A stretch of DNA of 63,630 bases, filler included, from Octopus bimaculoides (GCF_001194135.2; 8 parts of 8 records of this genome joined end to end with filler, not necessarily neighbours in it), one strand, 5' to 3'; positions 10,781-31,250 are shown, counted from the first letter of the whole stretch. Translations and numbers: made by a program. Notes: generated from the letters alone by a model not told the origin.

Positions 10781-11198
10781 AAAAGATTACAAGAGTTATG
10801 GAATGGAGTATCGGAAATCCAGGCTACATATGTTTCATAGCGAGTGGAACCTCAGAAGTGGTAAAATTCAAGCAAGGTGTATAATGCCAGCTACTCTTCA
10901 GATCAAGGATATCTTCATTAGATTAAAAGCGACATTGTCGCAAGGAGGTATATGCTGATGCAGAGAGGATTCAATCAGAATGTATGGAGGGCACAGTATG
11001 TGAGGGGTATATCCCTCTCACATACTGTGCCCTCCTTGCGACAATGTAACCTTTAGTCCAATCAAGATATCCTTGGCCTGAGGAGTAGCCAGTGATATAC
11101 ACCTCACTTGGATTTTACCACTTCTGAGGTTTCACTCACTATGAAATAGATGTAGCCTGGATTTTTCCTACTCCATTCTGTAATTCTTGTATTCTTTT
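10781..11198. repeat. About 420-bp fold-back (palindromic) element
   Basis: Outer arms about 10781-10952 and 11031-11198 are inverted copies (roughly 80% identity by eye); perfect 19-bp inner stem 10986-11004/11017-11035. Confidence 0.8.
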
Positions 11199-11599
11199 AT
11201 TCTTTTGTTTCAGTCATCTGACTGTGGCCATGCTGGAGCACCGCCTTTAGTTGAGTAAATCAACCCCAGGACCTATTCTTAGTAAGTCTAGTACTTATTT
11301 TATCGGTTTCTTTTGCCAAACCACTAATTCACGGGGACAGAAACACAACAGCATCAGTTGTCAAGTGATGTTGTGTGTGTGTGTGGGGGGGGCAAACACA
11401 CACACACACACACACATACATACATATATCTATTTACACATAAGACGGGCTTCTTTCAGTTTCCATCTACCAACTCCACTCACAAGGCTTTGGTAGGCCT
11501 GAGGCTATAATAGAAGACACTTGCCCAAGGTGCCATGCAGTGGGATTGAACAAGGAACCATGTGGTTGGTAAGCAAGCTACTTACCACACAGCCACTCC
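11195..11599 (-). mobile_element. SINE family B (CCTTGGGCAAGT core, internal TG/TA microsatellite)
   Basis: Reverse complement of GGAGTGGCTGTGTGGTAAG...GGTGCTCCAGCATGGCC...GACTGAAAC. Confidence 0.85.
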
Positions 11600-14221: not shown

Positions 14222-17200
14222 TTATGTTTCATCTAAGTGGTTTGGTTTCAAAGAATGTGTGTTATCTTTATCTGGAATAGTCACATCACTACCAAATAGA
14301 CAATCAACAGCAGTATAACTGTGAAGAGGTTTACTAGAAGAGTTCTCATTCTCATTAGTATTAGAAACATCTTCCACATGTTCAGAAGACTTATTAGCTG
14401 CACTACTGCATGTGGAATGATTTGTGTCTGAAAATGAATTATTTATTGAATGTGGATTTTCTTCCATTTGAATAGAATCAATTGTAGAAATTTGTCTTTT
14501 ACCAATCTCATCCCCTTGACATTTAACATAATCTACTGATACGATATCTGGTTTCAAATCTTCTTCTTCTTTAGCACAATCTGGAAATTTTTCCAACTCT
14601 GAAGTATTCCTAGTATCATTAAACATTTTATCTGTATTCACATTAAATGGCATGTTAGAAGTGATCTCAGATGGACAAACTAAAAGTTGTTCATCTGGGG
14701 GAAAAGGTTCAGATTTTATACTGACAGTGGGCTGCAAATAAATATTAGCATCTACTTCAATGATAGGTTTGCAATCTAAAACATCAGCTTCAGTGTTATA
14801 ATGACTTGAATGAAGGTTAGTTGGAGAATGACTGCTACTTTTTGTAGTTGAAACTCTATCAGATAATCTGGAATCACATTTGGATGATGTATCTGGTAGC
14901 TTTGAAGCAAACTGCTCTGTTGAATTGGATGAAGTCAAAATTCTTGGTTGATTTAAGTTATTATCTTCTAAAATATTACTACTGAAAAACAAAGGGGACA
15001 ATGGAATTCTTAAATTACTTTCAAGATTTATATTTTCAGAATGTTCGTTTGTTGACTGTGCTACGTCAGGAATACTACAACTTGATGTTGATTCTGGGAA
15101 ACAATGGTTAAAGGAGTTTGTTGCCTGAGATAATCTAGATTCATCATGTTGTTGTCTATCTCCAGAGACTGTAGTTGAGTTTGTCTCATCTCTGGGGTTC
15201 TGACAAATTCTTTTATGCCGTGTCAACTGGATGTGAAATGTAAATGCACACCTACATTTGGTACATTTGAATGGTTTTTCTCCTGTATGTGTACGGATGT
15301 GAGTATTCAAATTACTGCGATCAGAGAAAGCTTTACCACAGTATTGACACTTGAAAGGCTTGTCACCTGTATGGTGCCGAATATGTGATTTCAGGTGGCT
15401 CGACTGTTGAAATGTCCTTGCACAGAATCGACATTTAAGACTTTCTCGCTTTAAATTATATGGGTTTTGGGTATGATGAGTTCTTTTATGTTTATCAAGT
15501 AACAATTGCTGGAAAAAGAGTTTCATGCAAAATTCACAACGATACACTTTCTTGGTGCTAAAATTTGCATGATGAGTTTTAAGATGTAAATTAAGTGATT
15601 TGCAAGAAGAAAATTTACGTTCACAATAATTACACACTAAGTTTTCATTACCATCAATTTCTGAAGGGGCTAAGAGAACTGAATTGTTATTATCTGTAAA
15701 TTGCTTTTTATGCTGGTTTATGGTATCAAGATTGGGAGGCAGCTTCCATAATTCCATTGCTAAAGAGGAGAGTCTTCCAGTATTTGAAAATAAACCAACA
15801 GGTTGCAGCTGTTCTCGAGAAGTCTTATTAGCCAACAAATCCTTTCTGAAGACATTTTGGGAGGAAAATGGCTGTGAGTTCTGGGTTGAAATTGGCTCCA
15901 AGATAAAAGTAGATTCTTGATCCTTCAATAATTGTTGACATTCTTGAATGTGCCTTTTGAAAGGCTGAGGAAATGTAAAAGCTTGTTTGCATGTTTGGCA
16001 CTGATATAATTTCCCAGCTGTGTGAGTTGTTAAATGGTTGTCTAAAGTAAAACTGTTGGGAAATATACAATAACATATAGGACAAATGAAATTATTGTCA
16101 TTATTTAATTTCTGCTTTAAGGTTTTCTGAGCTATGCTCTCCTGAAGCACTCCATCCTTTAACAAGTGGCTCTTTTCATGGAGTCGCAAATGACAATCAC
16201 GTGAAAACGTCAGATCACAATATTCACACTGAAACAATATTTCTTGGGGATGAAGCTTCAAGTGAACTGCTAGCTCTGTAAATCGATAAAAAGTTTCACC
16301 ACAAAATTCACACTCATATACTTTACTTCCTGTATGTAACCTAATATGAACTGCTAGTGTAGTCACTAGTTTGAAAACCTTACCACAGTAACAACAAGGA
16401 AACAAACTGCTATTTGTGGCCAAACTCTCATTGTTTCTTTGAGTATATGATGAGACATTGGATCTCATTTCAACATTGTCATTATCATTGCAAAATATGC
16501 CTGGTTTCACAAAAGAACTGGCTTCCTCTCCAGATTGTGTTAATGAATTCATTCGGGAAACATTATCATTGCAATAGTTTTTGTTAGCAGTCCCTGATAT
16601 TTTGTTACATGTAAAAGTTGACAAAGAATTATTTATAGAATCTTGGTCTTCAGAAAATCGGGATGATTTTATGATATCATTGCTATACACATCTGGATTA
16701 CATTGATTTTCTGTTAAGTTCTGTTGAGTAGAGATAGTTTTTAATTCCACAGCTTTTCTAGAGGAAGCATCCTGATAATTAAAATTTGGTTTTTGTTCAG
16801 CCTGTTCTAAACTGTTACCAGGTCTTGGAAGGAGTAAATTGTCTGACTTACTGCTAGTAACAGTTCTGTTGTTACAATCCTGTAATTCAGCTTCTTCCTG
16901 TAGACTAGTGGTACTATAAGGCATCATTGATTCAGCTTGGTTATTGTAAACTTGAACTGATAAAGGATCCTTAAAATGGATTTCATTACTGTTGAGTATG
17001 CGGTCAGTTGTTTTGTCACTGAAAAATATATCTCCAGATTGGCCAAGTTTCTTTGAAAGACTGGAATTATTTGCCAAATTAGTTTGTTCTACAGTATTTT
17101 GAAGAGGAATTTGCAAAGAATTACTTCGTTTCTGATATTGATGATGTAACTGTGCTAATGCTGAAGGTTTACAGACTCTTTTATGTCGACTAAGCTGGAT

Positions 17201-20200
17201 ATGAAATGTAAAAGCTTTTCCACAAAATAAACATTTAAATGGTTTTTCTCCAGTGTGAGTTCTCCTGTGAGTATTCAAGTTACTACGGTCAGCAAAGGCT
17301 TTCCCACAATACTGACACAAAAATGGCTTGACTCCTGTGTGTGTACGTACATGGCTATTAAGCTGGCCAGCCTTCTGAAAAGACTTTTTACATAAAGCAC
17401 ATTCAAACATTTTCTCACTCGTTGCAAAGTTGTGGGATCGTAGATGCACTGACAGTAGATAAAGTCCAAGAAAATTCCTTTTGCAATATTTACAACGAAA
17501 TAACTTTTTCCCAGGATGATAACTCAGCAAATTTGACTGCAAGGGAATTTGATTTTTATCAGTCAGCTCTAAAGATTTATCTATTGGTGTAGATTCTACA
17601 ATGGATTTTTCAGTAAGGGTTAACTCTTCAGTAGTAGACTTACTTCTAGTTAATGAATCAGCTGCATCAGACTGATTTATTTCAGTACTCATCGACATAT
17701 TGTGTTTTTTCCATTCTTCCTTGATTTCTGGTACATTTTCTTTAGTTTCACCAACATCAGCAACTTCCACTTGATTCTCTTCCATTACACCAATACTTAA
17801 CGGATTGCTGTAATGTGTTTCACAATTATTTGTCTTTACTGTTTTGTTGGCTGTGTTAACCTGAAGAGATGATGTAGTATTTGAAGGGTTTTCCATATAA
17901 CAACTGTCTGGAGAACCATTAGCTTCTTTAACGGATGAGATGAAATGTCTTGACTCTTTGTTTCTTAATTCTGTTCCACTTTGTTCAAAACTGGAAAGCT
18001 TGTCTACTTGAGAGATAAGTGAAATAGTTGATATTTTCTCTTTGGATGGATATTGTATGGAGAGATTCTTGTTACCAAAGCATTTAATTTTATGCCGTTG
18101 CAACTGAATGTGAAATGTGAAGGACTGGTTACAGCTAAGGCATTTGAAGGGTTTCACTTTAGTGTGTAGCCTCATGTGGGTGTTAAGATTGCTTTGATTA
18201 GAGAAAGCCTTATTACAAAATTGACAAGTGAACGGTTTATCTCCAGTGTGAGTCCTGATATGGGCATTTAAATGACTAGGTTGTAGAAATGATTTGGGAC
18301 AAAATTTGCAAGTATAAGGCTTTTTCATGTTGCTCACATTGGCTTTCACTTTGAAGGTTTCTAAAGGAAATTTGCTATGGCTTTTCTTACAATGTTTGTC
18401 TAAGTCATCCTTCTTAGAAAATGACTTGTAACAATATTGGCAAGTTAACAAAGCTTCCTCTGATTTTGATCCTGAAGACAAAGAACTATAGTCAGAGGTA
18501 TTGCTATTGCAATTGGTAGTAGTTGTCAGGTCATTATCATAATCCTCAGACAAGTCAATGTGACATTGCCTTAAGCAGTCTTTAGAAAACTCTGAAGGGA
18601 ACTCTATCTGTTGGTTAGAAGTATTATCTTGAAGTTTACCATCAAATGTAGATAACCTGGATAAAAGGTTTCTATCAGTAGTTTTCCATGGTTTCAAACA
18701 GATATTTTGCTCATCAGTGCTATTATCTGGTGTTTCAACAGTAAGATCAACAATGTTATCTTTACTACCAGGCTCTATCAAATCGGATTGATTTAAAGTA
18801 GAATCTACTTCACAGGAAGAATTCACTGAGCTATTAAGAGTTTCGGAATTATCACAGTTTTTTATGAAATCTGGATTAAGTTGGATACTGTAATTGGTAC
18901 CGCTATTGTTAATGTTGTAAACATGGGATGGCATTGAGATGGTTGGTAGTAAAGTATCAACATCATTATTATTATTATTATTATCAGTACTACTAAATGA
19001 TGTATTGCTCTCCAATACAACAGGCTCAGCTGCTTTGCAATTACGTTTGTGGCGATTAAGTTGGATGTGAAACGTGAACTCTTGAAAACATAAAGTACAT
19101 TTGAATGGCTTTTCACCTGTGTGAAGACGACGATGAGACTTAAGATTGCTCCGATCAGCAAACCCTTTACCACAAAATGAACATTTATATGGTTTGGCTC
19201 CAGTGTGTGTGTGTAAATGAGAATTGAGACGAGCAACTTGTTGGAATGTTTTGCCACAAAATTTGCACTCAAAATTTCTTTGGCAATTATGAGAATTCAA
19301 GTGTATTACTAACTGGTAAGAATGATGGAAAGTCTTTTTGCATACATCACAAAAAATAGATTTTCGATGGACAGGTTTCTTTGAAATTGTGTTACTATTA
19401 ATTAAATCCTCTTGGTTCCTAATGTCAGTTGTTGTCTTGTCACTCCCACTTAGAAGATCTGATGGATTAGATGAAGGAACTTCATCTTCTGGCACTGTGT
19501 TAGCATCAAAAGTGGATTTAACTTCTTCAGAAGTACCATTAGGTGAATCAGAATCAATATAGATAATTTTATCATACTTGATATTTTCAGAGAGACAAGC
19601 ATTTTTCTGTATGGAACTAGTTCCACTTTCTTCAATCTGTTGACTATTAAAACCAGTGTTAGTCATATTAGCAGTTACATATATACTATTGGTTTGGGGG
19701 TGGAATTTATGTTTCTCATGTTTTGAGACATTTGTGTATGGCAAGGATTCATCCTCAGACTTATACAAATCATAAGTTTCTGTATTTAACAAACTACAAC
19801 TGGACACAACTGTGTCAGCAGAAATTTCACGTAAATCTTTCGATGAGCCACAAATGGAAGAGGAATCTTTTGCATCACTGTACATGTTATTTGATGATGT
19901 TGATTCATTATGGAAACTGGAGACTGCATTGTTTGCTTCATTTTTACTGAAAAACAAATTAGTGGGTTGTTGCATATCATCAGAACATTCACTTAAGATA
20001 AAACCAGATGATGCTGAATATAAACTATTTTCACTAAAAGGAGCACTTTGTATAGGACTGATATCAGATGTAAAATTATTAAATTGAGATTGATTAGCAA
20101 CAGCAATGGTAGTGTTATGATTATTGTTCTTTTCATCCATCTGAAAACTTGATGTGGAATTTGTATTCCTGGACATGCAAACTTTTTTGTGACGACTCAA

Positions 20201-20557
20201 TTGAATATGAAATGTGAAAGCCTTCTCACATAATTCACATTTGAATGGTTTCTCACCTGTATGTGTACGAATATGCGTATTAAGATTGCCTCGGTCAGTG
20301 AAAGCCTTTGGGCAGTAAGGACACTGGAATGGCCGGTCTCCTGTGTGTGTACGAACATGTGTGGTCAAATGGCCAGATTGAGTAAAAGATTTTTTACAGT
20401 AGCTACACTTATAAGGTTTTTCAGACTGAGAAGTCTGATTGTTTACATCAGCAATAAAGTCAACTGCATCAGAAGAAGCCATGTTGCATTTAGAAAACAT
20501 TTCATCAGGACTAGTAGCATTCTGGAAAATATCCTTATTAGAATATTTCCCAGACAT
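14222..20557 (-). CDS. Large multi-cluster C2H2/C2HC zinc-finger protein (2111 aa, about 25 fingers), probable transcription factor
   Basis: Uninterrupted 6336-nt ORF with repeated F/Y-x-C-x2-C-x3-F-x5-L-x2-H-x3-H/C motifs, TGEKP-type linkers and Ser/Asn/Thr-rich spacers. An in-frame TGA at 20582-20584 bounds it upstream. The true start may be a later ATG or involve an upstream exon. Confidence 0.93.
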   Translation of the reverse strand: MSGKYSNKDIFQNATSPDEMFSKCNMASSDAVDFIADVNNQTSQSEKPYKCSYCKKSFTQSGHLTTHVRTHTGDRPFQCPYCPKAFTDRGNLNTHIRTHTGEKPFKCELCEKAFTFHIQLSRHKKVCMSRNTNSTSSFQMDEKNNNHNTTIAVANQSQFNNFTSDISPIQSAPFSENSLYSASSGFILSECSDDMQQPTNLFFSKNEANNAVSSFHNESTSSNNMYSDAKDSSSICGSSKDLREISADTVVSSCSLLNTETYDLYKSEDESLPYTNVSKHEKHKFHPQTNSIYVTANMTNTGFNSQQIEESGTSSIQKNACLSENIKYDKIIYIDSDSPNGTSEEVKSTFDANTVPEDEVPSSNPSDLLSGSDKTTTDIRNQEDLINSNTISKKPVHRKSIFCDVCKKTFHHSYQLVIHLNSHNCQRNFECKFCGKTFQQVARLNSHLHTHTGAKPYKCSFCGKGFADRSNLKSHRRLHTGEKPFKCTLCFQEFTFHIQLNRHKRNCKAAEPVVLESNTSFSSTDNNNNNNDVDTLLPTISMPSHVYNINNSGTNYSIQLNPDFIKNCDNSETLNSSVNSSCEVDSTLNQSDLIEPGSKDNIVDLTVETPDNSTDEQNICLKPWKTTDRNLLSRLSTFDGKLQDNTSNQQIEFPSEFSKDCLRQCHIDLSEDYDNDLTTTTNCNSNTSDYSSLSSGSKSEEALLTCQYCYKSFSKKDDLDKHCKKSHSKFPLETFKVKANVSNMKKPYTCKFCPKSFLQPSHLNAHIRTHTGDKPFTCQFCNKAFSNQSNLNTHMRLHTKVKPFKCLSCNQSFTFHIQLQRHKIKCFGNKNLSIQYPSKEKISTISLISQVDKLSSFEQSGTELRNKESRHFISSVKEANGSPDSCYMENPSNTTSSLQVNTANKTVKTNNCETHYSNPLSIGVMEENQVEVADVGETKENVPEIKEEWKKHNMSMSTEINQSDAADSLTRSKSTTEELTLTEKSIVESTPIDKSLELTDKNQIPLQSNLLSYHPGKKLFRCKYCKRNFLGLYLLSVHLRSHNFATSEKMFECALCKKSFQKAGQLNSHVRTHTGVKPFLCQYCGKAFADRSNLNTHRRTHTGEKPFKCLFCGKAFTFHIQLSRHKRVCKPSALAQLHHQYQKRSNSLQIPLQNTVEQTNLANNSSLSKKLGQSGDIFFSDKTTDRILNSNEIHFKDPLSVQVYNNQAESMMPYSTTSLQEEAELQDCNNRTVTSSKSDNLLLPRPGNSLEQAEQKPNFNYQDASSRKAVELKTISTQQNLTENQCNPDVYSNDIIKSSRFSEDQDSINNSLSTFTCNKISGTANKNYCNDNVSRMNSLTQSGEEASSFVKPGIFCNDNDNVEMRSNVSSYTQRNNESLATNSSLFPCCYCGKVFKLVTTLAVHIRLHTGSKVYECEFCGETFYRFTELAVHLKLHPQEILFQCEYCDLTFSRDCHLRLHEKSHLLKDGVLQESIAQKTLKQKLNNDNNFICPICYCIFPNSFTLDNHLTTHTAGKLYQCQTCKQAFTFPQPFKRHIQECQQLLKDQESTFILEPISTQNSQPFSSQNVFRKDLLANKTSREQLQPVGLFSNTGRLSSLAMELWKLPPNLDTINQHKKQFTDNNNSVLLAPSEIDGNENLVCNYCERKFSSCKSLNLHLKTHHANFSTKKVYRCEFCMKLFFQQLLLDKHKRTHHTQNPYNLKRESLKCRFCARTFQQSSHLKSHIRHHTGDKPFKCQYCGKAFSDRSNLNTHIRTHTGEKPFKCTKCRCAFTFHIQLTRHKRICQNPRDETNSTTVSGDRQQHDESRLSQATNSFNHCFPESTSSCSIPDVAQSTNEHSENINLESNLRIPLSPLFFSSNILEDNNLNQPRILTSSNSTEQFASKLPDTSSKCDSRLSDRVSTTKSSSHSPTNLHSSHYNTEADVLDCKPIIEVDANIYLQPTVSIKSEPFPPDEQLLVCPSEITSNMPFNVNTDKMFNDTRNTSELEKFPDCAKEEEDLKPDIVSVDYVKCQGDEIGKRQISTIDSIQMEENPHSINNSFSDTNHSTCSSAANKSSEHVEDVSNTNENENSSSKPLHSYTAVDCLFGSDVTIPDKDNTHSLKPNHLDET

Positions 20558-21879
20558 TAAAGAACAGGGTGATGTTTTAATTCATACTTAATGACGCCAA
20601 TTCAAAATCAGTATATGAGTGTTGCATGTATATGTGTGTATGTCTGTATATGTGCATAAGCACACATGTACATGTGCATATACATGGATGGTGAGTGTTC
20701 ACCATTGGACAACAATAAATCAAATGAATTTCTCCAAATCAGTAAACATTCAGTAAAACAGATTGTGCTTGCTACTTTTAGCTGTGCAATGTGTTCATCA
20801 ATTAAATTGTTTGGTGTTTAAATATCATTTTCTTTCCTTATTAATACTGCATTTCAACCAGAACTTTCCTTTTATTGAGCATTTAATTCATTCCATTTAT
20901 TGTACTGTAGTTTTTGTTTCCTACTCAAAGATTTCACACATCCACTGAGTCATGGTCAATAAGTTAACTTTCTACCATCATCCTAGAAAAAAAGAATAAA
21001 GGTTTTTTTAATTGAGTTATAAAATATTTTGGATATAGTGATACAGCAGAATATGAATACATGAATCAAGATCATAGATCTTGTTTGGTCATTGTTCTCC
21101 CAAATGATAATATTTTTAACTCTTTAGCACTTAAACTGGCTGTATCCAGCCTGAAAATTCTACCTGCACATTACATGCCTCTGTTAAATCTCTTCCCTAC
21201 AACATATCCACCAAACACCCACACCCTCTGCCAACCTGTATCCACTCACTACATCTTCTCACCCCCAGCCCCTACTTCTGCCATTCAGTCACCTTTTGCA
21301 ATCTCGGAAATTTACCTACCCACACACTCTATCCAAATCCAATCCCTGGTCCGCTTCACTTTATACACCTCCCTGTCACTTGGCTGCATGCCCCATTACA
21401 TCTTCACCAAGATCTCTCTCTCTCCAACTGAGGTAGCTATGTATCTCCTCTACTACCAGACACCCATTTCTGTCCCTCTTTTCATACACAAACTTCTCAT
21501 TACCTGGCACAAAGCCATCTCCCTCAAGAATAAAAAGTTTTGAATGGTACAACAATGCACTATAATACAAAAAATGGACTATATACCTGTTGTAATTTAG
21601 TTATCTATAGTCCAATGATATTTCGGAATACAATTCCTTCTTCAGATATTCTTAGATGGAGTCGCTGCTATAATATGTTTTCCAACGGCTTTTCTTTATT
21701 ACTCCCCTAAGAAGTCCTTGTCTTGCAAGTTACTTGGTGACCTCACTGCTGCTGGTGACACATAACAAGCTTCCAGTACACTTTGTAAAGCAGTAAACAT
21801 TAGGAAAGGTGTCCAACCATACAAACCACACCAAAGTAGGCAGTAGAGCTTCACACAACAATGTGATATCACTGTAACT

Positions 21880-22500
21880 ACTTTTGTCTAAGACATCTCC
21901 TTTACCTATGTAGCAGCTGACTATGGTGCTGCTACATCAGTTATTGAATACGACTCCTTTTGGATGACCTTTTCAACTGTACAAGTATTCAGGCCATATC
22001 CCACCCTGCCAGATATCTTAAGTGTCCTGGTGGTAATTCCTGATCTTCATATCCTTAATTGCCTTATCAACCATGCAGCTGTCTACTTGGATAGCTGGTC
22101 TCTCTGTTGGGTCCACATTAAGAAGACTTTCATTTTCCCATGCATTCTCCACATTTAGCAGCCTTTCATAGTGACACTTTCGTGCCACCTCTTTTTTTTC
22201 CAGAATGCCATCATTCATTCAAGTACACTTCTCATCTACATCATGATTTTCTTTGCATGCTGTCTTACTATCCAGAAGATCTCATGCCTCTAGTTCTTAC
22301 ACCACGGAACATTGACAAATTTCTTCCTTTTTGCTTTTCCCCAAGTGAAATATACCTGTCACCTAGCTTCCCTTCTAGCTACCTTCCAGTTCCTCCATGC
22401 CTGTTTCTTTGCTCTTATGGTACTGTTTTTCTTCAATGACCCACCATCAAGTCACCCTAGGTCTAGCTGGAACTTTGCACCAGCCACAAATTTTATCTGT
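21880..22500 (-). mobile_element. Decayed RTE-like LINE ORF2 fragment
   Basis: KEVARKCHYERLLNVENAWE...VDKAIKDMK resembles the pre-RT segment (W..HF..LLN ... V..AI..MK). Confidence 0.5.
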
Positions 22501-23157
22501 TGCCCATAGTAGGCTACCTTGAAGGAACTTGTAATTGTCCTTGCAAATCATATACAAAGAGGAATAATGGTTAGCCTAGTTCTTTATGAATGTGCAATGT
22601 CTGTCTGCATGTCATTATGACAAAAACTGTGCAAGCAAAATTCTAAACTTAATAAACTGAAATATTGTGTTTATTCAGCTATAATTTTCCCTCAAGTATA
22701 AGGCACATTGCTAATTTTGGGCAAAAAAATATCTCTGTATCACTAAAGGCTGGTACTAAGATAATAGTGGTTTTTGTTATATATACATAAAAAAAAAAAA
22801 TTGCAAGTATTTTTACAAGCTAGCATTCATGTAATAACACCCAACCTTAATTCTAAGGTTTCAAAATCTGGATTTAAAATGTTATAAACACAAATAAAAA
22901 TAGTAATATAAAAACCTACAAAAAAGCAGCTAACAGTTATAAAATTCATTGATACTATATATATATATATATATATAGTGCACTGTTCTGTTCTTTTATT
23001 AGTACAATCAGCCAAAAAAACTACCCCCATCCAGTAAGAGATAAATTTCATTTAATAAACACAGAATTTAAAACTGAGCTGCCATAAAGTTCCATGCTAC
23101 TCAGACAATACAGTAGTCAGATGACATTGTATAGCATGCTCTGTACTATCCTACAGT

Positions 23158-23534
23158 GGAGGTGCAATGGCCCAGTGGTTAGGGCAGCGGACTCGCGGTC
23201 ATAGGATCGCGGTTTCGATTCCCAGACCGGGCGTTGTGAGTGTTTATTGAGCAAAAACACCTAAAGCTCCACGAGGCTCTGGCAGGGGATGGTGGCGAAC
23301 CCTGCTGTACTCTATCACCACAACTTTCTCTCACTCTTACTTCCTGTTTCTGTTGTGCCTGTAATTCAAAGGGTCAGCCTTGTCACACTGTGTCACGCTG
23401 AATATCTCCGAGAACTACGTTAAGGGTACACATGTCTGTGGAGTGCTCAGCCACTTGCACGTTAATTTCACGAGCAGGCTGTTCCGTTGATCGGATCAAC
23501 TGGAACCCCCGATGTCGTAAGCGACGGAGTGCTA
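23158..23534 (+). mobile_element. Full-length tRNA-derived SINE (family C), TSD ACTATCCTACA
   Basis: A box TGGCCCAGTGG, B box GGTTTCGATTCC; TSD at 23145-23155 and 23535-23545; near-identical to the 27979 and 48518 copies. Confidence 0.9.
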
Positions 23535-23667
23535 ACTATCCTACAATCTTTTAGGTTTTTGAGCATGTAACTTACAGGAGCTCAGTTTCAAATCCTGTGT
23601 TTATATATGTATGTCAAACCATCTAACCTATGCCAGTATATGAAAAACAGGTGTTAAATGATGATGA

Positions 23668-26210: not shown

Positions 26211-26365
26211 ACTACTTAAATACAGAGGTCCTGATGCATCTACGTAACAATGTTTTTACAGTGCACACTAGTTAGGGTTAGTTTTTAGGGTTAGGGTTGG
26301 TTAGTGTTAGGGTTGGTTAGGGTTAGGGCTACGTAGATGCGTCGGGACCTCTGTATTTAAGTAGT
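26211..26365. mobile_element. 155-bp MITE with 35-bp TIRs and internal degenerate (TTAGGG)n
   Basis: TIRs 26211-26245 and 26331-26365 match at 33/35 (both differences at CpG); GGTTAGGG-type repeats at about 26270-26328. Confidence 0.7.
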
Positions 26366-26868: not shown

Positions 26869-27012
26869 CAGGAGTGGCTGTGTGGGAAGAAGCTTGCTTC
26901 CCAACCACATGGTTCCGGATTCAGTCCCACTGCGTGGCACCTTGAGCAAGTATCTTCTACTATAGATAGCATTTGGTAGACGGAAACTGATAGAAGCCCG
27001 TCGTGCGTATAC

Positions 27013-27044
<32 letters not shown>

Positions 27045-27240
27045 ATGTAGGTGTGTGTCCAGCATCACTTGACAACCGATATTGGTGTGTTTACGTCCCC
27101 GAAACTTAGCGGTTCGGCAAAAGCGACTGATAGAATAAGTACTAGGCTTATAAAGAATAAATCCTGGGGTCGATTTCTTCGACTAAAGGCGGTGCTCCAG
27201 CATAGCAGCAGTCAAATGACTGAAACGTGTAAAAGAGTAA
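26869..27240 (+). mobile_element. SINE family B, near full length
   Basis: Head, core, microsatellite and tail all present; CpGs retained. Confidence 0.85.
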
Positions 27241-27849: not shown

Positions 27850-28694
27850 GGTAATCTTCCAGTTTAGGGATGTAAAAAAAGTAAATAAAAATACAAGGGA
27901 AATAACTTAACGTCTTACTAGTATTATCCGTACTACTCTGAAATGTGTTTTTTTTTTAGCTGTTTATAAATAAATCACGGAGGCGCAATGGCCCAGTGGT
28001 TAGGGCAGCGGACTCGCGGTCATAGGATCGCGGTTTCGATTCCTAGACCGGGCGTTGTGAGTGTTTATTGAGCGAAAACACCTAAAGTTCCACGAGGCTC
28101 CGGCAGGGGATGGTGGCGAACCCTGCTGTACTCTTTCACCACAACTTTCTCTCACTCTTACTTCCTGTTTCTGTTGTGCCTGTAATTCAAAGGGTCAGCC
28201 TTGTCACACTGTGTCACGCTGAATATCCCCGAGGACTACGTTAAGGGTACACGTGTCTGTGGAGTGCTCAGCCACTTGCACGTTAATTTCACGAGCAGGC
28301 TGTTCCGTTGATCGGATCAACTGGAACCCTCGACGTCGTAAGCAACGGAGTGCCAACAACAACAACAACAAATAAATCACACACGTGATTGAAGTTAACT
28401 GTTTATATATAAATCACACACGTGATTGAATATCATAGTACCCGCTGCACAACTTATGGTAATCTTCCAGTATAGGGAAATAACGGTCAAACTAAAGCGT
28501 TTGACCCGAGCTCAAAAATTTTTTTTAATAGTGTAATAGGTGTAAAACAACTTGCTGTGAACGAATATGAAGAGAAAAATGCGCGCTCGCGAACGGGTGG
28601 GGTGGGGATAGTACGGATAATACTAGTAAGACGTTAAGTTATTTCCCTTGTATTTTTATTTACTTTTTGTACCTCTCTAAACTAGAAGATTACC
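27850..28694. mobile_element. Mutator-like non-autonomous element (MITE) with 85-bp TIRs and 9-bp TSD
   Basis: TIRs 27850-27934 and 28610-28694 match at 81/85; flanks CATATCTCC (27841-27849) and CATATCTCT (28695-28703); G...C termini. Confidence 0.8.
27979..28369 (+). mobile_element. Full-length tRNA-derived SINE (family C), (AAC)n tail, TSD AAATAAATCAC
   Basis: TSD at 27968-27978 and 28370-28380; nested in a MITE. Confidence 0.92.
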
Positions 28695-28879
28695 CATATC
28701 TCTTATATATTGTGGCTTTGTGTCTACGTATGAACATAGCCGGCTAGAAAAAATAGAGACAAGCCTTTCGTGGTGAAAAATCTTGGCATTTTTAGTAGTA
28801 GTAGTAGTAGTATCAGCAGCAGATAAAGATGCTGTTGTTATATTGCTCAGCCCCAGGCCAACCCTGGTTGAACTGACTT

Positions 28880-28955
28880 CATGATCAAAAGTGCTTAACG
28901 TTTGGTTGTATGGTAAGAAGCATGCTTTCCAACCACATGGTTCAGTCCCACTGCG

Positions 28956-29001
<46 letters not shown>

Positions 29002-29175
29002 GTGTGTGTTTGTCCCCCACCACTGTACAACCGGTTAGTGTGTTTATGTCCTCGTAACTTAGCGGTTCAGCAAAAGAGACTTAAACAGAGTACTGGGGTC
29101 GATTCATTCGATTAAAATTCTTCAAGACGGTGCTCCCAGCATGGCCGCCGTCTAGTGACGGAAACAAGCAAAAAG
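28880..29175 (+). mobile_element. SINE family B with an internal deletion
   Basis: Head joined directly to the microsatellite and tail. Confidence 0.65.
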
Positions 29176-29179
29176 TAAT

Positions 29180-30794: not shown

Positions 30795-31055
30795 ATTATG
30801 TATGTATGTATGTATGTATGTATGTATGTATGTGTGTGTGTGTGTGTATGTATGTATATACGTATGTATGTGTGTGTGTATGTATGTATTTATGTATGTA
30901 TGTGTGTGTATGTATGTATGTATGTATGCATGTATATATGTGTGTGTGTGTATGTATGTATATATGTATGTATGCATGTATGTATGTATGTGGGTGTATG
31001 TGTGTGTGTGTGTGTATGTATGTGTGTATGTCTTTGTGTTCGTGTGTGTGTGTGT
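30795..31055. repeat. (TATG)/(TG)n compound microsatellite
   Basis: Directly visible. Confidence 0.9.
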
Positions 31056-31246
31056 TCGTGCCTCTGTTCACAACCACTGCTTGACAACCGGTGCTGGTGT
31101 GTTTACATCCCTGTAACTGAGCGGTTCGGCCTAAGAGACGGTAGAATAAGTACCAGACTTTAAAAGAATAAGGACTTGCATCGATTCATTCGACTAAAAT
31201 TCTTCATGGCGGTGCTCCAGCATGGCCACAATCTAATGATTGAAAC

Positions 31247-31250
<4 letters not shown>
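31040..31250 (+). mobile_element. SINE family B, 3' half
   Basis: TTGACAACCGGTGCTGGTGTGTTTAC...GGTGCTCCAGCATGGCC. Confidence 0.7.

What the first reader, a model, noticed from the sequence alone, without database searches (positions are those of the whole stretch)
15203..20413. One 79-aa zinc-finger triad repeated five times at about 1-kb spacing in a single protein
Five modules are each exactly 237 nt: 20177-20413, 19037-19273, 18080-18316, 17171-17407 and 15203-15439. Their helices are near-identical. Finger a is QSGHL/QVARL/QPSHL/KAGQL/QSSHL, finger b is DRGNL/DRSNL/NQSNL/DRSNL/DRSNL, and finger c is FHIQL in all five. The spacers are unrelated low-complexity sequence and synonymous sites have diverged (seen). 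Start-to-start spacing is 1140, 957, 909 and 1968 nt, and a sixth decayed module (AFTFPQPFKRHIQEC, ending 15938) lies within the long gap. This indicates old internal duplication with purifying selection on the triads. It differs from the contiguous, rapidly diversifying finger arrays typical of the expanded octopus C2H2 family and recalls the dispersed repeated clusters of Spalt and Schnurri. Inference: a multivalent binder able to engage several copies of one DNA site (looping, insulator or repeat-coating function).
Basis: partly seen in the sequence, partly recalled or inferred. Interest (0 to 1): 0.72.

Follow-up and report, generated by a model that had tools for sequence, protein, structure and literature searches.

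The report
Octopus protein with five repeated zinc-finger triads
A real, strongly conserved Octopus gene encodes a 2,111-residue zinc-finger protein in which one three-finger DNA-reading unit occurs five times on long flexible linkers; it is a tidy example of a known protein design, not a new kind of system.

Summary
An uninterrupted minus-strand ORF (14222-20557, 2,111 aa; Octopus bimaculoides) holds 25 C2H2-type fingers. Five 79-aa triads lie at the stated coordinates, and a decayed sixth module ends at 15938.

The triads are old internal duplicates. Synonymous sites between them are saturated, and the spacers share nothing beyond composition. Against the O. vulgaris orthologue, triad dN/dS is 0.014 (2 non-synonymous against 32 synonymous changes), against 0.28 in the spacers. 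Triads 1-4 are protein-identical in the two species.

The third finger is C2HC with an invariant helix (FTFHIQLxRHK). I found that helix in no other protein in searches of 5.8 and 1.84 billion sequences. Orthologues appear only in O. vulgaris and O. sinensis, under the uninformative name 'Xfin-like'.

The predicted triad structure (pLDDT 92) superposes on DNA-bound three-finger arrays. The most likely function is multivalent, sequence-specific DNA binding to related 9-bp sites. This is inferred, not shown.

The design is not unique. Another octopus giant zinc-finger protein and several arthropod ones also carry dispersed repeated finger modules, as do ZEB, Schnurri and Spalt. Verdict: a new member of a known kind, of moderate-to-low interest.

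The parts
14222..20557 (-). Complete single-exon coding sequence, 2,111 aa plus stop (stop codon 14222-14224). It is called as a gene in O. bimaculoides.
   Evidence: Orthologues are 94% identical and collinear in O. vulgaris (2,116 aa) and O. sinensis (2,117 aa). Whole-gene dN/dS is 0.197.
20177..20413 (-). Triad 1 (aa 49-127). Helices: a QSGHLTT, b DRGNLNT, c FHIQLSR. Finger c is C2HC.
   Evidence: It is 100% protein-identical in three Octopus species.
19037..19273 (-). Triad 2 (aa 429-507). Helices: a QVARLNS, b DRSNLKS, c FHIQLNR.
   Evidence: There are 0 non-synonymous and 9 synonymous differences from O. vulgaris.
19283..19351 (-). Auxiliary finger directly upstream of triad 2 (CDVCKKTFHHSYQLVIHLNSHNC). 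Its helix is non-canonical.
18080..18316 (-). Triad 3 (aa 748-826). Helices: a QPSHLNA, b NQSNLNT, c FHIQLQR. The b-c linker is HTKVKPF.
   Evidence: There are 0 non-synonymous and 11 synonymous differences from O. vulgaris. O. sinensis has T to M just before helix c.
18377..18442 (-). Auxiliary finger upstream of triad 3 (CQYCYKSFSKKDDLDKHCKKSH).
17171..17407 (-). Triad 4 (aa 1051-1129). Helices: a KAGQLNS, b DRSNLNT, c FHIQLSR.
   Evidence: There are 0 non-synonymous and 6 synonymous differences.
17432..17494 (-). Auxiliary finger upstream of triad 4 (CKYCKRNFLGLYLLSVHLRSH). Its helix is hydrophobic.
15938..16396 (-). Decayed sixth module (aa 1388-1540). It has two extra fingers, then an a-like finger (SRDCHLRL), a 27-aa insertion in place of the linker, a b-like finger (PNSFTLDN) and a c-like C2HC finger (AFTFPQPFKRHIQEC).
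   Evidence: fingers. family D2 (15958-16027, 60% DNA identity to the c-finger reference). It is retained with a few substitutions in O. vulgaris and O. sinensis.
15473..15634 (-). Two auxiliary fingers upstream of triad 5 (CNYCERKFSSCKSLNLHLKTHH and CEFCMKLFFQQLLLDKHKRTHH).
15203..15439 (-). Triad 5 (aa 1707-1785). Helices: a QSSHLKS, b DRSNLNT, c FHIQLTR.
   Evidence: The only two triad amino-acid differences from O. vulgaris are here: R8K and S18A (helix position +6 of finger a).
19358..20176 (-). Spacer 1 (aa 128-400), rich in S, N and T and acidic. Presumed disordered linker.
   Evidence: composition, no similarity to other spacers. dN/dS 0.29.
18449..19036 (-). Spacer 2 (aa 508-703).
   Evidence: dN/dS 0.135.
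17501..18079 (-). Spacer 3 (aa 827-1019).
   Evidence: dN/dS 0.35.
16403..17170 (-). Spacer 4 (aa 1130-1385).
   Evidence: dN/dS 0.40.
15641..15931 (-). Spacer 5 (aa 1543-1639).
   Evidence: dN/dS 0.15.
14225..15202 (-). C-terminal tail (aa 1786-2111). No recognisable domain.
   Evidence: Pfam matches are zinc-finger families plus two sub-threshold chance hits. dN/dS 0.29.

Best explanation
**What it is.** This is a functional, single-exon Octopus gene. Its 2,111-aa protein was built by ancient internal duplication of a roughly 1-kb unit: spacer, one auxiliary finger, and a three-finger head a-b-c. Five heads are intact and one has decayed.

**What each head looks like.** Each intact head is a Zif268-like three-finger array with TGEKP-type linkers, ending in a C2HC finger whose helix (FTFHIQLxRHK) is invariant. 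The heads hang on 100-330-residue linkers that are rich in S, N and T, acidic, and probably disordered. No effector domain is present.

**Most likely mechanism.** Each head reads about 9 bp. Fingers b and c give nearly all heads the same 6-bp core, and finger a tunes the 3' triplet. The protein would therefore bind with high avidity where several related sites lie within reach. It would act as a multivalent transcriptional or chromatin-organising DNA binder.

**Shown.** The gene, its architecture, the duplication history, the strong constraint and the finger fold.

**Inferred.** DNA as the ligand, the shared motif, multivalency and the nuclear role.
For: **Real gene.**
- The ORF is 6.3 kb and uninterrupted in 35% GC DNA.
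- It is collinear and intact in three Octopus species.
- Whole-gene dN/dS is 0.197 at dS 0.118.

**Duplication.**
- Five DNA copies are found independently.
- Protein identity among triads is 56-72%, against 44% for generic three-finger windows.
- Synonymous sites are saturated at pS 0.69-0.99.
- Spacers are unrelated.
- A decayed sixth copy fills the double-length gap.

**Constraint.**
- Triads show 2 non-synonymous against 32 synonymous changes (omega 0.014). Spacers show 100.5 against 88.5 (omega 0.277). Fisher p = 9e-8.
- All helix contact residues of triads 1-4 are identical in O. bimaculoides and O. vulgaris.

**DNA-binding competence.**
- Pfam zf-C2H2 and zf-H2C2_2 match at E = 1e-78 to 1e-97.
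- The linkers are HTG(D/A/V)(K/R)P and HTGEKPF.
- The AlphaFold2 model has mean pLDDT 92 and three beta-beta-alpha units.
- The model superposes on DNA-bound Aart (TM 0.92, rmsd 1.2 A), ZBTB7A, CTCF and Zif268.

**Shared specificity.**
- Helix identity among the modules is 0.87 for c, 0.71 for b and 0.40 for a.
- Under the canonical -1/+3/+6 code (established knowledge, Zif268 class), modules 1, 2 and 5 predict 5'-GAn nAC nGA-3'. Module 3 predicts GAn nAA nGA. Module 4 predicts GAn nAC nAG.

**Not an arms-race gene.**
- No other finger lies within 10 kb on either side in either species.
- No paralogue with a c-type finger was found.
Against: - No binding, expression or localisation data exist. 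No paper mentions the gene.
- Phe at helix position -1 of finger c has no assignment in the recognition code. An invariant, partly hydrophobic helix face (F, H, I) could equally be a protein-contact surface.
- AlphaFold2 tends to give the DNA-wrapped arrangement to any TGEKP-linked array, so one search is weak evidence for DNA binding.
- No classical basic nuclear localisation signal was found by a simple pattern.
- There is a puzzle. The duplications are many times older than the O. bimaculoides / O. vulgaris split, yet I detected no orthologue outside the genus. This may only reflect which cephalopod proteomes the databases hold.
Confidence: 0.55

Rival explanations
1. Finger c is not a base-reading finger. 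It is a protein-protein or self-association module, like the CCHC fingers of FOG/U-shaped that dock on GATA factors, or dimerising C2H2 fingers. Each unit would then be a two-finger nucleic-acid anchor (a-b) plus a docking finger. The protein would be a scaffold presenting five identical docking sites.
For: - Finger c has the C2HC ligand set in all five modules and in the decayed one.
- Its helix is far more conserved than helix a or b (0.87 against 0.40 and 0.71).
- It carries F, H and I at positions -1, +1 and +2, which is unusual for base contacts.
- No generic finger in the PDB scores above about 21 bits against the c-finger profile.
- Single C2H2 fingers that mediate dimerisation are documented (PMC12774644, abstract seen).
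Against: - Finger c is joined to finger b by a perfect HTGEKPF linker in 4 of 5 modules. That linker is typical of fingers docking consecutively in the major groove.
- Finger c has Q at +3 and R at +6, which are classic base-contacting residues.
- The model places c in register with a and b, as in DNA complexes.
Confidence: 0.2
2. It is one of the expanded, lineage-specific octopus C2H2 genes whose job is to recognise a transposon or satellite family and silence it, as KRAB zinc-finger proteins do in tetrapods. The five heads would match a repeated element.
For: - The gene is detectable only in the genus Octopus.
- Octopus zinc-finger motifs are reported to match TE consensus sequences more often than expected (PMC10547256).
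- The locus is embedded in SINE-like repeats.
- Five similar heads would suit a tandem or dispersed repeat.
Against: - No arms-race signature is present. Contact residues are frozen between species and triad omega is 0.014.
- The gene is solitary rather than in a tandem zinc-finger cluster.
- I found no close paralogues.
- No repressor domain was found in Pfam.
- The module duplications are ancient.
Confidence: 0.15
3. It is an RNA-binding multi-finger protein, as some fingers of TFIIIA and JAZ/ZNF346 are, rather than a DNA binder.
For: There is a Pfam zf-C2H2_jaz match at E = 1.6e-11. Long disordered linkers are common in RNA-binding proteins.
Against: - The jaz match lies on an ordinary finger (aa 776-796). 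It is far weaker than the classical C2H2 matches on the same residues.
- Linkers are the 7-residue TGEKP type, not the long linkers of dsRNA-binding fingers.
- The structural neighbours are all DNA complexes.
Confidence: 0.05
4. It is not a functional gene. It would be a chance ORF, a decaying pseudogene, or a gene-model fusion of tandem three-finger genes.
For: I could examine no transcript evidence. The protein's 90% cluster has no member from the Logan read assemblies, whereas the comparable gene P0036 has one.
Against: - A 2,111-codon open frame in 35% GC DNA is astronomically unlikely by chance: about 7% of random codons would be stops.
- The frame is intact and collinear in three species, with dN/dS 0.2 overall and 0.014 in the triads.
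- It is one continuous ORF, so no model fusion is needed.
Confidence: 0.02

Closest known systems
ZEB1/ZEB2 (zfh-1 family)
   Same: These have two widely separated, paralogous C2H2 clusters that read similar half-sites, so the protein binds bipartite elements. The last finger of each cluster is atypical. (Established knowledge.)
   Different: ZEB has two clusters and a homeodomain between them. This protein has five or six modules, no homeodomain and no detectable sequence orthology.
Schnurri / HIVEP (ZAS domains)
   Same: Duplicated finger modules lie far apart in a very large protein, each able to bind the same kind of site, with acidic and Ser-rich regions between them. (Established knowledge.)
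   Different: HIVEP modules are finger pairs and there are two of them. Here the modules are triads ending in a C2HC finger, five times over.
Spalt / SALL
   Same: Dispersed, mutually similar finger clusters sit in a long protein.
   Different: SALL clusters are doublets carrying the SAL-box signature. No KGNLK-type SAL box is present here, and the SALL1 fragment hit is only generic.
O. bimaculoides LOC106883442 (P0036) and its relative labelled Argonauta hians (P0037)
   Same: P0036 is from the same genome and has the same design principle. It is about 2,400 aa with six dispersed modules that repeat the helix pair SRNLxAH / QKSALxVH at spacings of 270 to 660 residues. P0037 has the same layout.
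   Different: The module is different: 4-6 fingers, with no C2HC finger and no FTFHIQL helix. It is only 28% identical over 20% of the query, so it is an analogue, not a paralogue of demonstrable closeness.
Arthropod 'Xfin-like' giants (Armadillidium P0049, Frankliniella P0008)
   Same: These carry repeated multi-finger units separated by spacers. In Armadillidium the unit is a triad whose third finger is C2HC.
   Different: Their helices, spacings (about 120-250 aa) and first fingers (CxYCxY...HX4H type) are unrelated. They are independent inventions or very remote relatives.
Xenopus Xfin (the name given by NCBI)
   Same: It is a large protein made of classical C2H2 fingers.
   Different: Xfin is an almost uninterrupted run of 37 fingers. 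Here 25 fingers sit in six clusters and about two-thirds of the residues are non-finger. The name reflects only generic finger similarity.
FOG / U-shaped CCHC fingers
   Same: These are classical-fold fingers with Cys as the fourth ligand, scattered along a large protein.
   Different: FOG CCHC fingers are solitary and bind GATA factors. Here the C2HC finger is the third member of a TGEKP-linked array. Any protein partner is unknown.

Membership tests
Classical (Krueppel-type) C2H2 zinc-finger proteins | CX2-4CX12HX3-5H/C spacing with the conserved hydrophobic core | tested here: met
   There are 25 matches in the ORF. Pfam PF00096 matches at E = 2.3e-78 and PF13465 at E = 3.4e-97.
Classical (Krueppel-type) C2H2 zinc-finger proteins | TGEKP-type seven-residue linkers between consecutive fingers | tested here: met
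   The alignment shows HTG(D/A/V)(K/R)P(F/Y) between a and b. Between b and c it shows HTGEKPF in 4 of 5 modules and HTKVKPF in module 3.
Classical (Krueppel-type) C2H2 zinc-finger proteins | beta-beta-alpha fold, with the array able to wrap the major groove | tested here: met
   The AlphaFold2 model has pLDDT 92 and three beta-beta-alpha units. Foldseek gives TM 0.82-0.92 to DNA-bound Aart, Zif268, ZBTB7A and CTCF. This is a prediction, not an experiment.
Classical (Krueppel-type) C2H2 zinc-finger proteins | sequence-specific DNA binding | not testable with these tools
   It needs PBM, SELEX or EMSA.
Xfin | one long contiguous finger array (37 fingers, few non-finger residues) | tested here: not met
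   There are six clusters separated by 97-273-residue spacers, and 1,389 of 2,111 residues lie outside the fingers.
Xfin | orthology-level sequence similarity | tested here: not met
   Most of the best non-Octopus hits are 22-32% identical over 16-51% of the query; a few are up to 47% identical over 5-8%. All similarity lies in generic fingers. With the generic fingers removed, only the Octopus cluster remains.
Expanded lineage-specific octopus C2H2 genes | membership of a tandem genomic cluster of zinc-finger genes | tested here: not met
   Six-frame scans of 10 kb on each side of the gene in O. bimaculoides and O. vulgaris found no credible finger outside it. The only other gene called in those flanks encodes a TUDOR-domain protein. 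A wider neighbourhood was not examined.
Expanded lineage-specific octopus C2H2 genes | many close paralogues | tested here: not met
   No other protein with a c-type finger appears among the 5.8-billion-protein database hits or the top 150 of the 1.84 billion representatives. Proteins with only one such finger could be missed.
Expanded lineage-specific octopus C2H2 genes | rapid change of DNA-contact residues | tested here: not met
   Triad dN/dS is 0.014. One contact-position change (S to A at +6 of finger a, triad 5) separates O. bimaculoides from O. vulgaris.
Spalt / SALL | finger doublets with the SAL-box motif | tested here: not met
   No KGNLK motif is present. The modules are triads.
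ZEB / zfh-1 | homeodomain between the finger clusters | tested here: not met
   The Pfam scan of the whole protein finds no homeodomain: only zinc-finger families plus two sub-threshold chance hits.
Schnurri / HIVEP | ZAS module: a finger pair plus an acidic/Ser-Thr region, present twice | tested here: not met
   The modules are three-finger units present five times. The acidic, Ser-rich linkers do resemble it.
FOG-type protein-binding CCHC fingers | Cys as the fourth zinc ligand in a classical-fold finger | tested here: met
   The pattern CX2CX12HX3C occurs in all five c fingers and in the decayed one.
FOG-type protein-binding CCHC fingers | the finger binds a protein partner (GATA N-finger) rather than DNA | not testable with these tools
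   It needs interaction assays.

The most novel reading that the evidence does not exclude
The protein is an Octopus-lineage architectural factor. Its five near-equivalent DNA-reading heads on flexible tethers would bind arrays of one short motif (for example in a satellite, a SINE family or clustered regulatory sites) and bridge or coat them. That would be an independently evolved multivalent chromatin organiser. The invariant C2HC third finger would supply a recognition mode (Phe at helix position -1) not seen in solved zinc-finger complexes.
Probability: 0.15. Interest if true: 0.6.

Novelty: new member of a known kind. Interest (0 to 1): 0.35.

Why it matters
Octopus genomes carry well over a thousand C2H2 genes, and almost none has a known function. 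This one stands out. It is solitary and slow-evolving, and it is built from five copies of one DNA-reading head whose contact residues have stayed the same while synonymous sites saturated. That makes it a convenient natural test of how multivalency and linker length shape zinc-finger targeting. It also offers an entry point for finding a conserved cis-element in cephalopod genomes. The invariant C2HC finger with Phe at helix position -1 has no structural precedent among solved fingers. The design as a whole (dispersed paralogous finger modules) is already known from ZEB, Schnurri, Spalt and others, and it recurs in other giant invertebrate zinc-finger proteins. The finding therefore extends a known theme and does not open a new one.

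Tried and rejected
1. **Triad-profile search of the 5.8-billion-protein database.** It returned only proteins of 139 aa or fewer. None had the FTFHIQL finger, so it said nothing about orthologues.

2. **Full-length search.** Generic poly-zinc-finger proteins swamped it. Only the Octopus cluster is a true match.

3. **Query with all generic fingers deleted.** Only the Octopus cluster came back, plus one weak generic hit.

4. **30-aa c-finger profile against 1.84 billion representatives.** The Octopus protein ranks first. The other 149 listed are generic poly-finger proteins without the c helix. Proteins with a single c-type finger would fall below the listed range, so they are not excluded.

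5. **Degenerate DNA pattern for F[TS]FH[IV]QLxRHK across metagenome contigs.** It gave six matches, all chance. They contain stop codons and have no finger context.

6. **Solved structures.** Only generic finger similarity appeared. SNAI1 and Gfi-1 share the ADRSNL-type helix b, but they score no better than designed or KRAB fingers, so I dropped a Snail-family origin.

7. **Corepressor and localisation motifs.** I looked for CtBP, eh1, WRPW, HP1, LxxLL and a simple NLS. None was found. Invariant 30-53-aa runs in the spacers are not beyond expectation at 93% identity.

8. **Literature.** No paper mentions 'Xfin' together with octopus. The 2015 octopus genome paper is not held in the library.

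9. **Rfam on the whole piece.** No RNA family matched.

Full report
**Source and gene**

The piece 9867-32647 comes from Octopus bimaculoides, assembly GCA_001194135.2, chromosome record CM046615.1 at about 35.95 Mb.

It holds one large ORF on the minus strand, 14222..20557, running from ATG to stop and encoding 2,111 aa. Base composition is about 35% GC. In such DNA roughly 7% of random codons are stops, so a 2,111-codon open frame cannot be chance.

The same protein is predicted in two other species:
- O. vulgaris: CAI9734061.1, 2,116 aa, 94% identical over 100% of the query.
- O. sinensis: XP_036365800.1 and XP_036365801.1, 2,117 aa.

All are named 'zinc finger protein Xfin-like'. In O. vulgaris the coding sequence is also one continuous block.

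**Checking the observation**

A pattern scan finds 25 C2H2-type fingers.

Finger c is a C2HC variant (CX2CX12HX3C) with the invariant string FTFHIQLxRHK.

The repeat finder, run blind on the DNA, recovers the same five copies at spacings of 1968, 909, 957 and 1140 nt, with 64-71% nucleotide identity.

The long 1968-nt gap holds a five-finger cluster. Its last three fingers look like a decayed a-b-c unit:
- a 27-aa insertion replaces the a-b linker;
- the final finger, CQTCKQAFTFPQPFKRHIQEC (15938-16000), keeps AFTF, RH and the C2HC ligands;
- that finger is 60% identical at DNA level to a c finger.

Each module except the first also has one or two auxiliary fingers with non-canonical, rather hydrophobic helices just upstream. 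The ancestral unit was therefore probably four fingers plus a spacer.

**Is the similarity more than the generic resemblance of all C2H2 fingers?**

Yes.

| Measure | Among the five triads | Generic windows |
|---|---|---|
| Whole-triad identity | 56-72% | mean 44%, highest mean 54% |
| Helix a identity (mean) | 0.40 | 0.26 |
| Helix b identity (mean) | 0.71 | 0.27 |
| Helix c identity (mean) | 0.87 | 0.18 (maximum 0.57) |

The signal therefore lies mainly in fingers b and c. Finger a is no more conserved among the modules than the upper generic range.

**Evolution**

Between paralogous triads the proportion of synonymous differences is 0.69-0.99. This is saturated. Only 19-30 of 44-57 degenerate codons that encode the same residue use the same codon. 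The protein-level similarity is therefore maintained by selection, not by recent gene conversion.

The spacers show no similarity to each other beyond composition (z from -0.8 to 1.9 against shuffles). They are S 16%, N 11% and T 8%, with D+E 14% against K+R 8%.

dN/dS against O. vulgaris, at overall dS 0.118:

| Region | dN/dS | Non-synonymous / synonymous changes |
|---|---|---|
| Triads | 0.014 | 2 / 32 |
| Other fingers | 0.155 | 13 / 18 |
| Spacers | 0.277 | 100.5 / 88.5 |

The triad-versus-spacer contrast gives Fisher p = 9e-8.

Triads 1-4 are identical in protein between the two species. Triad 5 differs by R8K and S18A.

The duplication-plus-purifying-selection reading is supported.

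**Relatives**

With the full protein as query, every hit other than the Octopus cluster is a generic poly-zinc-finger protein. Most are 22-32% identical over 16-51% of the query; a few are up to 47% identical over 5-8%.

With all generic fingers deleted from the query (spacers plus c fingers only), only the Octopus cluster remains.

A 30-aa c-finger profile searched against 1.84 billion representatives puts the Octopus protein first at 264 bits. None of the other 149 listed proteins contains a c-type helix.

No solved structure has one either. Generic fingers score at most about 21 bits per finger against the profile.

A degenerate DNA pattern for the c helix found only chance matches in metagenome contigs.

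I therefore found no orthologue of a characterised gene, and the 'Xfin-like' label is uninformative.

There are limits to this. Proteins with a single c-type finger would not reach the listed top 150. Several cephalopod proteomes may be absent from the databases.

This matters because the paralogue divergence is at least about 15 times the O. bimaculoides / O. vulgaris synonymous distance. Orthologues would therefore be expected well beyond the genus. Their apparent absence remains unexplained.

**Is the architecture unusual?**

Several other long proteins show dispersed repeated finger modules:
- O. bimaculoides LOC106883442 (P0036, 2,405 aa) has six dispersed modules repeating the helix pair SRNLxAH / QKSALxVH.
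- The same layout is seen in its relative P0037, labelled Argonauta hians.
- Frankliniella P0008 repeats a 3-5-finger unit about every 250 aa.
- Armadillidium P0049 repeats triads whose third finger is C2HC.

Classical examples of paralogous, widely separated finger modules are ZEB, Schnurri/HIVEP, Spalt and basonuclin (established knowledge).

What is particular here:
- the number of intact copies (five);
- the degree of constraint;
- the unprecedented c helix;
- the gene's isolation. No other finger lies within 10 kb on either side in either species, and the only other gene called within those flanks in O. vulgaris encodes a TUDOR-domain protein.

That isolation contrasts with the lineage-specific expansion clusters described for cephalopod C2H2 genes (PMC12513265).

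**Structure and likely mechanism**

A Pfam scan finds zinc-finger families plus two sub-threshold chance hits (PyrI_C and Zn_SUZ12). It finds no BTB, KRAB, SCAN, ZAD or homeodomain.

The AlphaFold2 model of a triad has mean pLDDT 92 and three beta-beta-alpha units. It superposes on DNA-bound three-finger segments of Aart (TM 0.92, rmsd 1.2 A), ZBTB7A, CTCF and Zif268. The linkers are of the TGEKP type.

By the canonical recognition code (helix +6, +3 and -1 read the 5', middle and 3' bases; this is established knowledge, not a test):

| Finger | Contact residues | Predicted triplet |
|---|---|---|
| c | R at +6, Q at +3, F at -1 | GA? |
| b | T/S at +6, N at +3, D at -1 | nAC (nAA in module 3) |
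| a, modules 1, 2, 3, 5 | varied | nGA |
| a, module 4 | varied | nAG |

My best explanation is a multivalent DNA binder whose heads share a core and differ slightly at one end. It would gain avidity where several related sites lie within reach of the 100-330-residue linkers. I put this at about 0.55. The gene, its history and its constraint are essentially certain. The ligand and the role are inferred.

**Rivals**

1. Finger c as a protein-docking or self-association finger in the manner of FOG CCHC fingers (0.2).
   - For: it has extreme conservation and a hydrophobic helix face.
   - Against: it sits behind a perfect TGEKP linker and carries Q at +3 and R at +6.
2. A repeat- or TE-targeting repressor of the expanded octopus type (0.15).
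   - For: this is plausible from the lineage restriction and from PMC10547256.
   - Against: the contact residues are frozen, the locus is solitary, and there is no repressor domain.
3. RNA binding (0.05).
4. A non-functional ORF or model artefact (0.02), effectively excluded.

**Verdict**

The evolutionary interpretation is supported. The functional interpretation is plausible but untested. The claimed distinctiveness is only partly supported.

This is an annotated but uncharacterised, genus-restricted (as far as can be seen) member of the known class of multi-cluster C2H2 proteins. Interest is moderate to low (0.35). It would rise if binding studies showed a shared clustered motif or a new recognition mode for the C2HC finger.

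Noticed in passing
window 26271-26328: There is an interstitial telomere-like array, about 10 copies of TTAGGG/GTTAGG, far from any chromosome end (about 35.9 Mb into a 58-Mb record).
   Followed up: no
window 27850-28694: 86-nt inverted repeats (27850-27935 and 28609-28694, 95% complementary) enclose 673 nt. This looks like a small terminal-inverted-repeat (MITE-like) element (I1).
   Followed up: partly
window 23158-23536 and 27979-28357: A 379-nt segment is present twice in direct orientation, 4,821 nt apart, at about 97% identity. The second copy lies inside the inverted-repeat element above (D3).
   Followed up: partly
window 11192-11599, 26869-27240, 28709-29177, 31008-31249: These are copies of a roughly 400-nt interspersed repeat. 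They also match many places in the O. bimaculoides and O. vulgaris loci at 69-84% identity. The repeat is SINE-like, each copy adjoining a TG or TATG microsatellite (D4).
   Followed up: no
window 20558-22977: The 2.4 kb upstream of the start codon is 90-92% identical to O. vulgaris. On the gene's strand, a polypyrimidine tract followed by AG at about 20983 could be the acceptor of the coding exon. A 160-aa ORF on the opposite strand (21061-21543) lies in this block and looks like a low-complexity chance ORF.
   Followed up: no
window 19564-19581 (aa 326-331+; motif KIIYIDSDS at aa 329-337): A SUMO-interaction-like motif (hydrophobic IIYI followed by DSDS) sits in spacer 1 and is invariant in the three Octopus species. 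Three psi-K-x-E sumoylation-type sites are also conserved. At 93% spacer identity this conservation is not significant on its own.
   Followed up: no
P0036 (O. bimaculoides LOC106883442) and P0037 (labelled Argonauta hians): This is a second octopus giant zinc-finger protein, with six dispersed modules that repeat the helix pair SRNLxAH / QKSALxVH. The relative labelled Argonauta has the same layout. A full-length copy is present in the Logan read assemblies, which suggests it is transcribed.
   Followed up: partly
P0049 (Armadillidium vulgare) and P0008 (Frankliniella fusca): These arthropod 'Xfin' proteins are built from many repeats of a multi-finger unit with spacers. In Armadillidium each unit is a triad ending in a C2HC finger. 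They may be true modular proteins or fused gene models.
   Followed up: no
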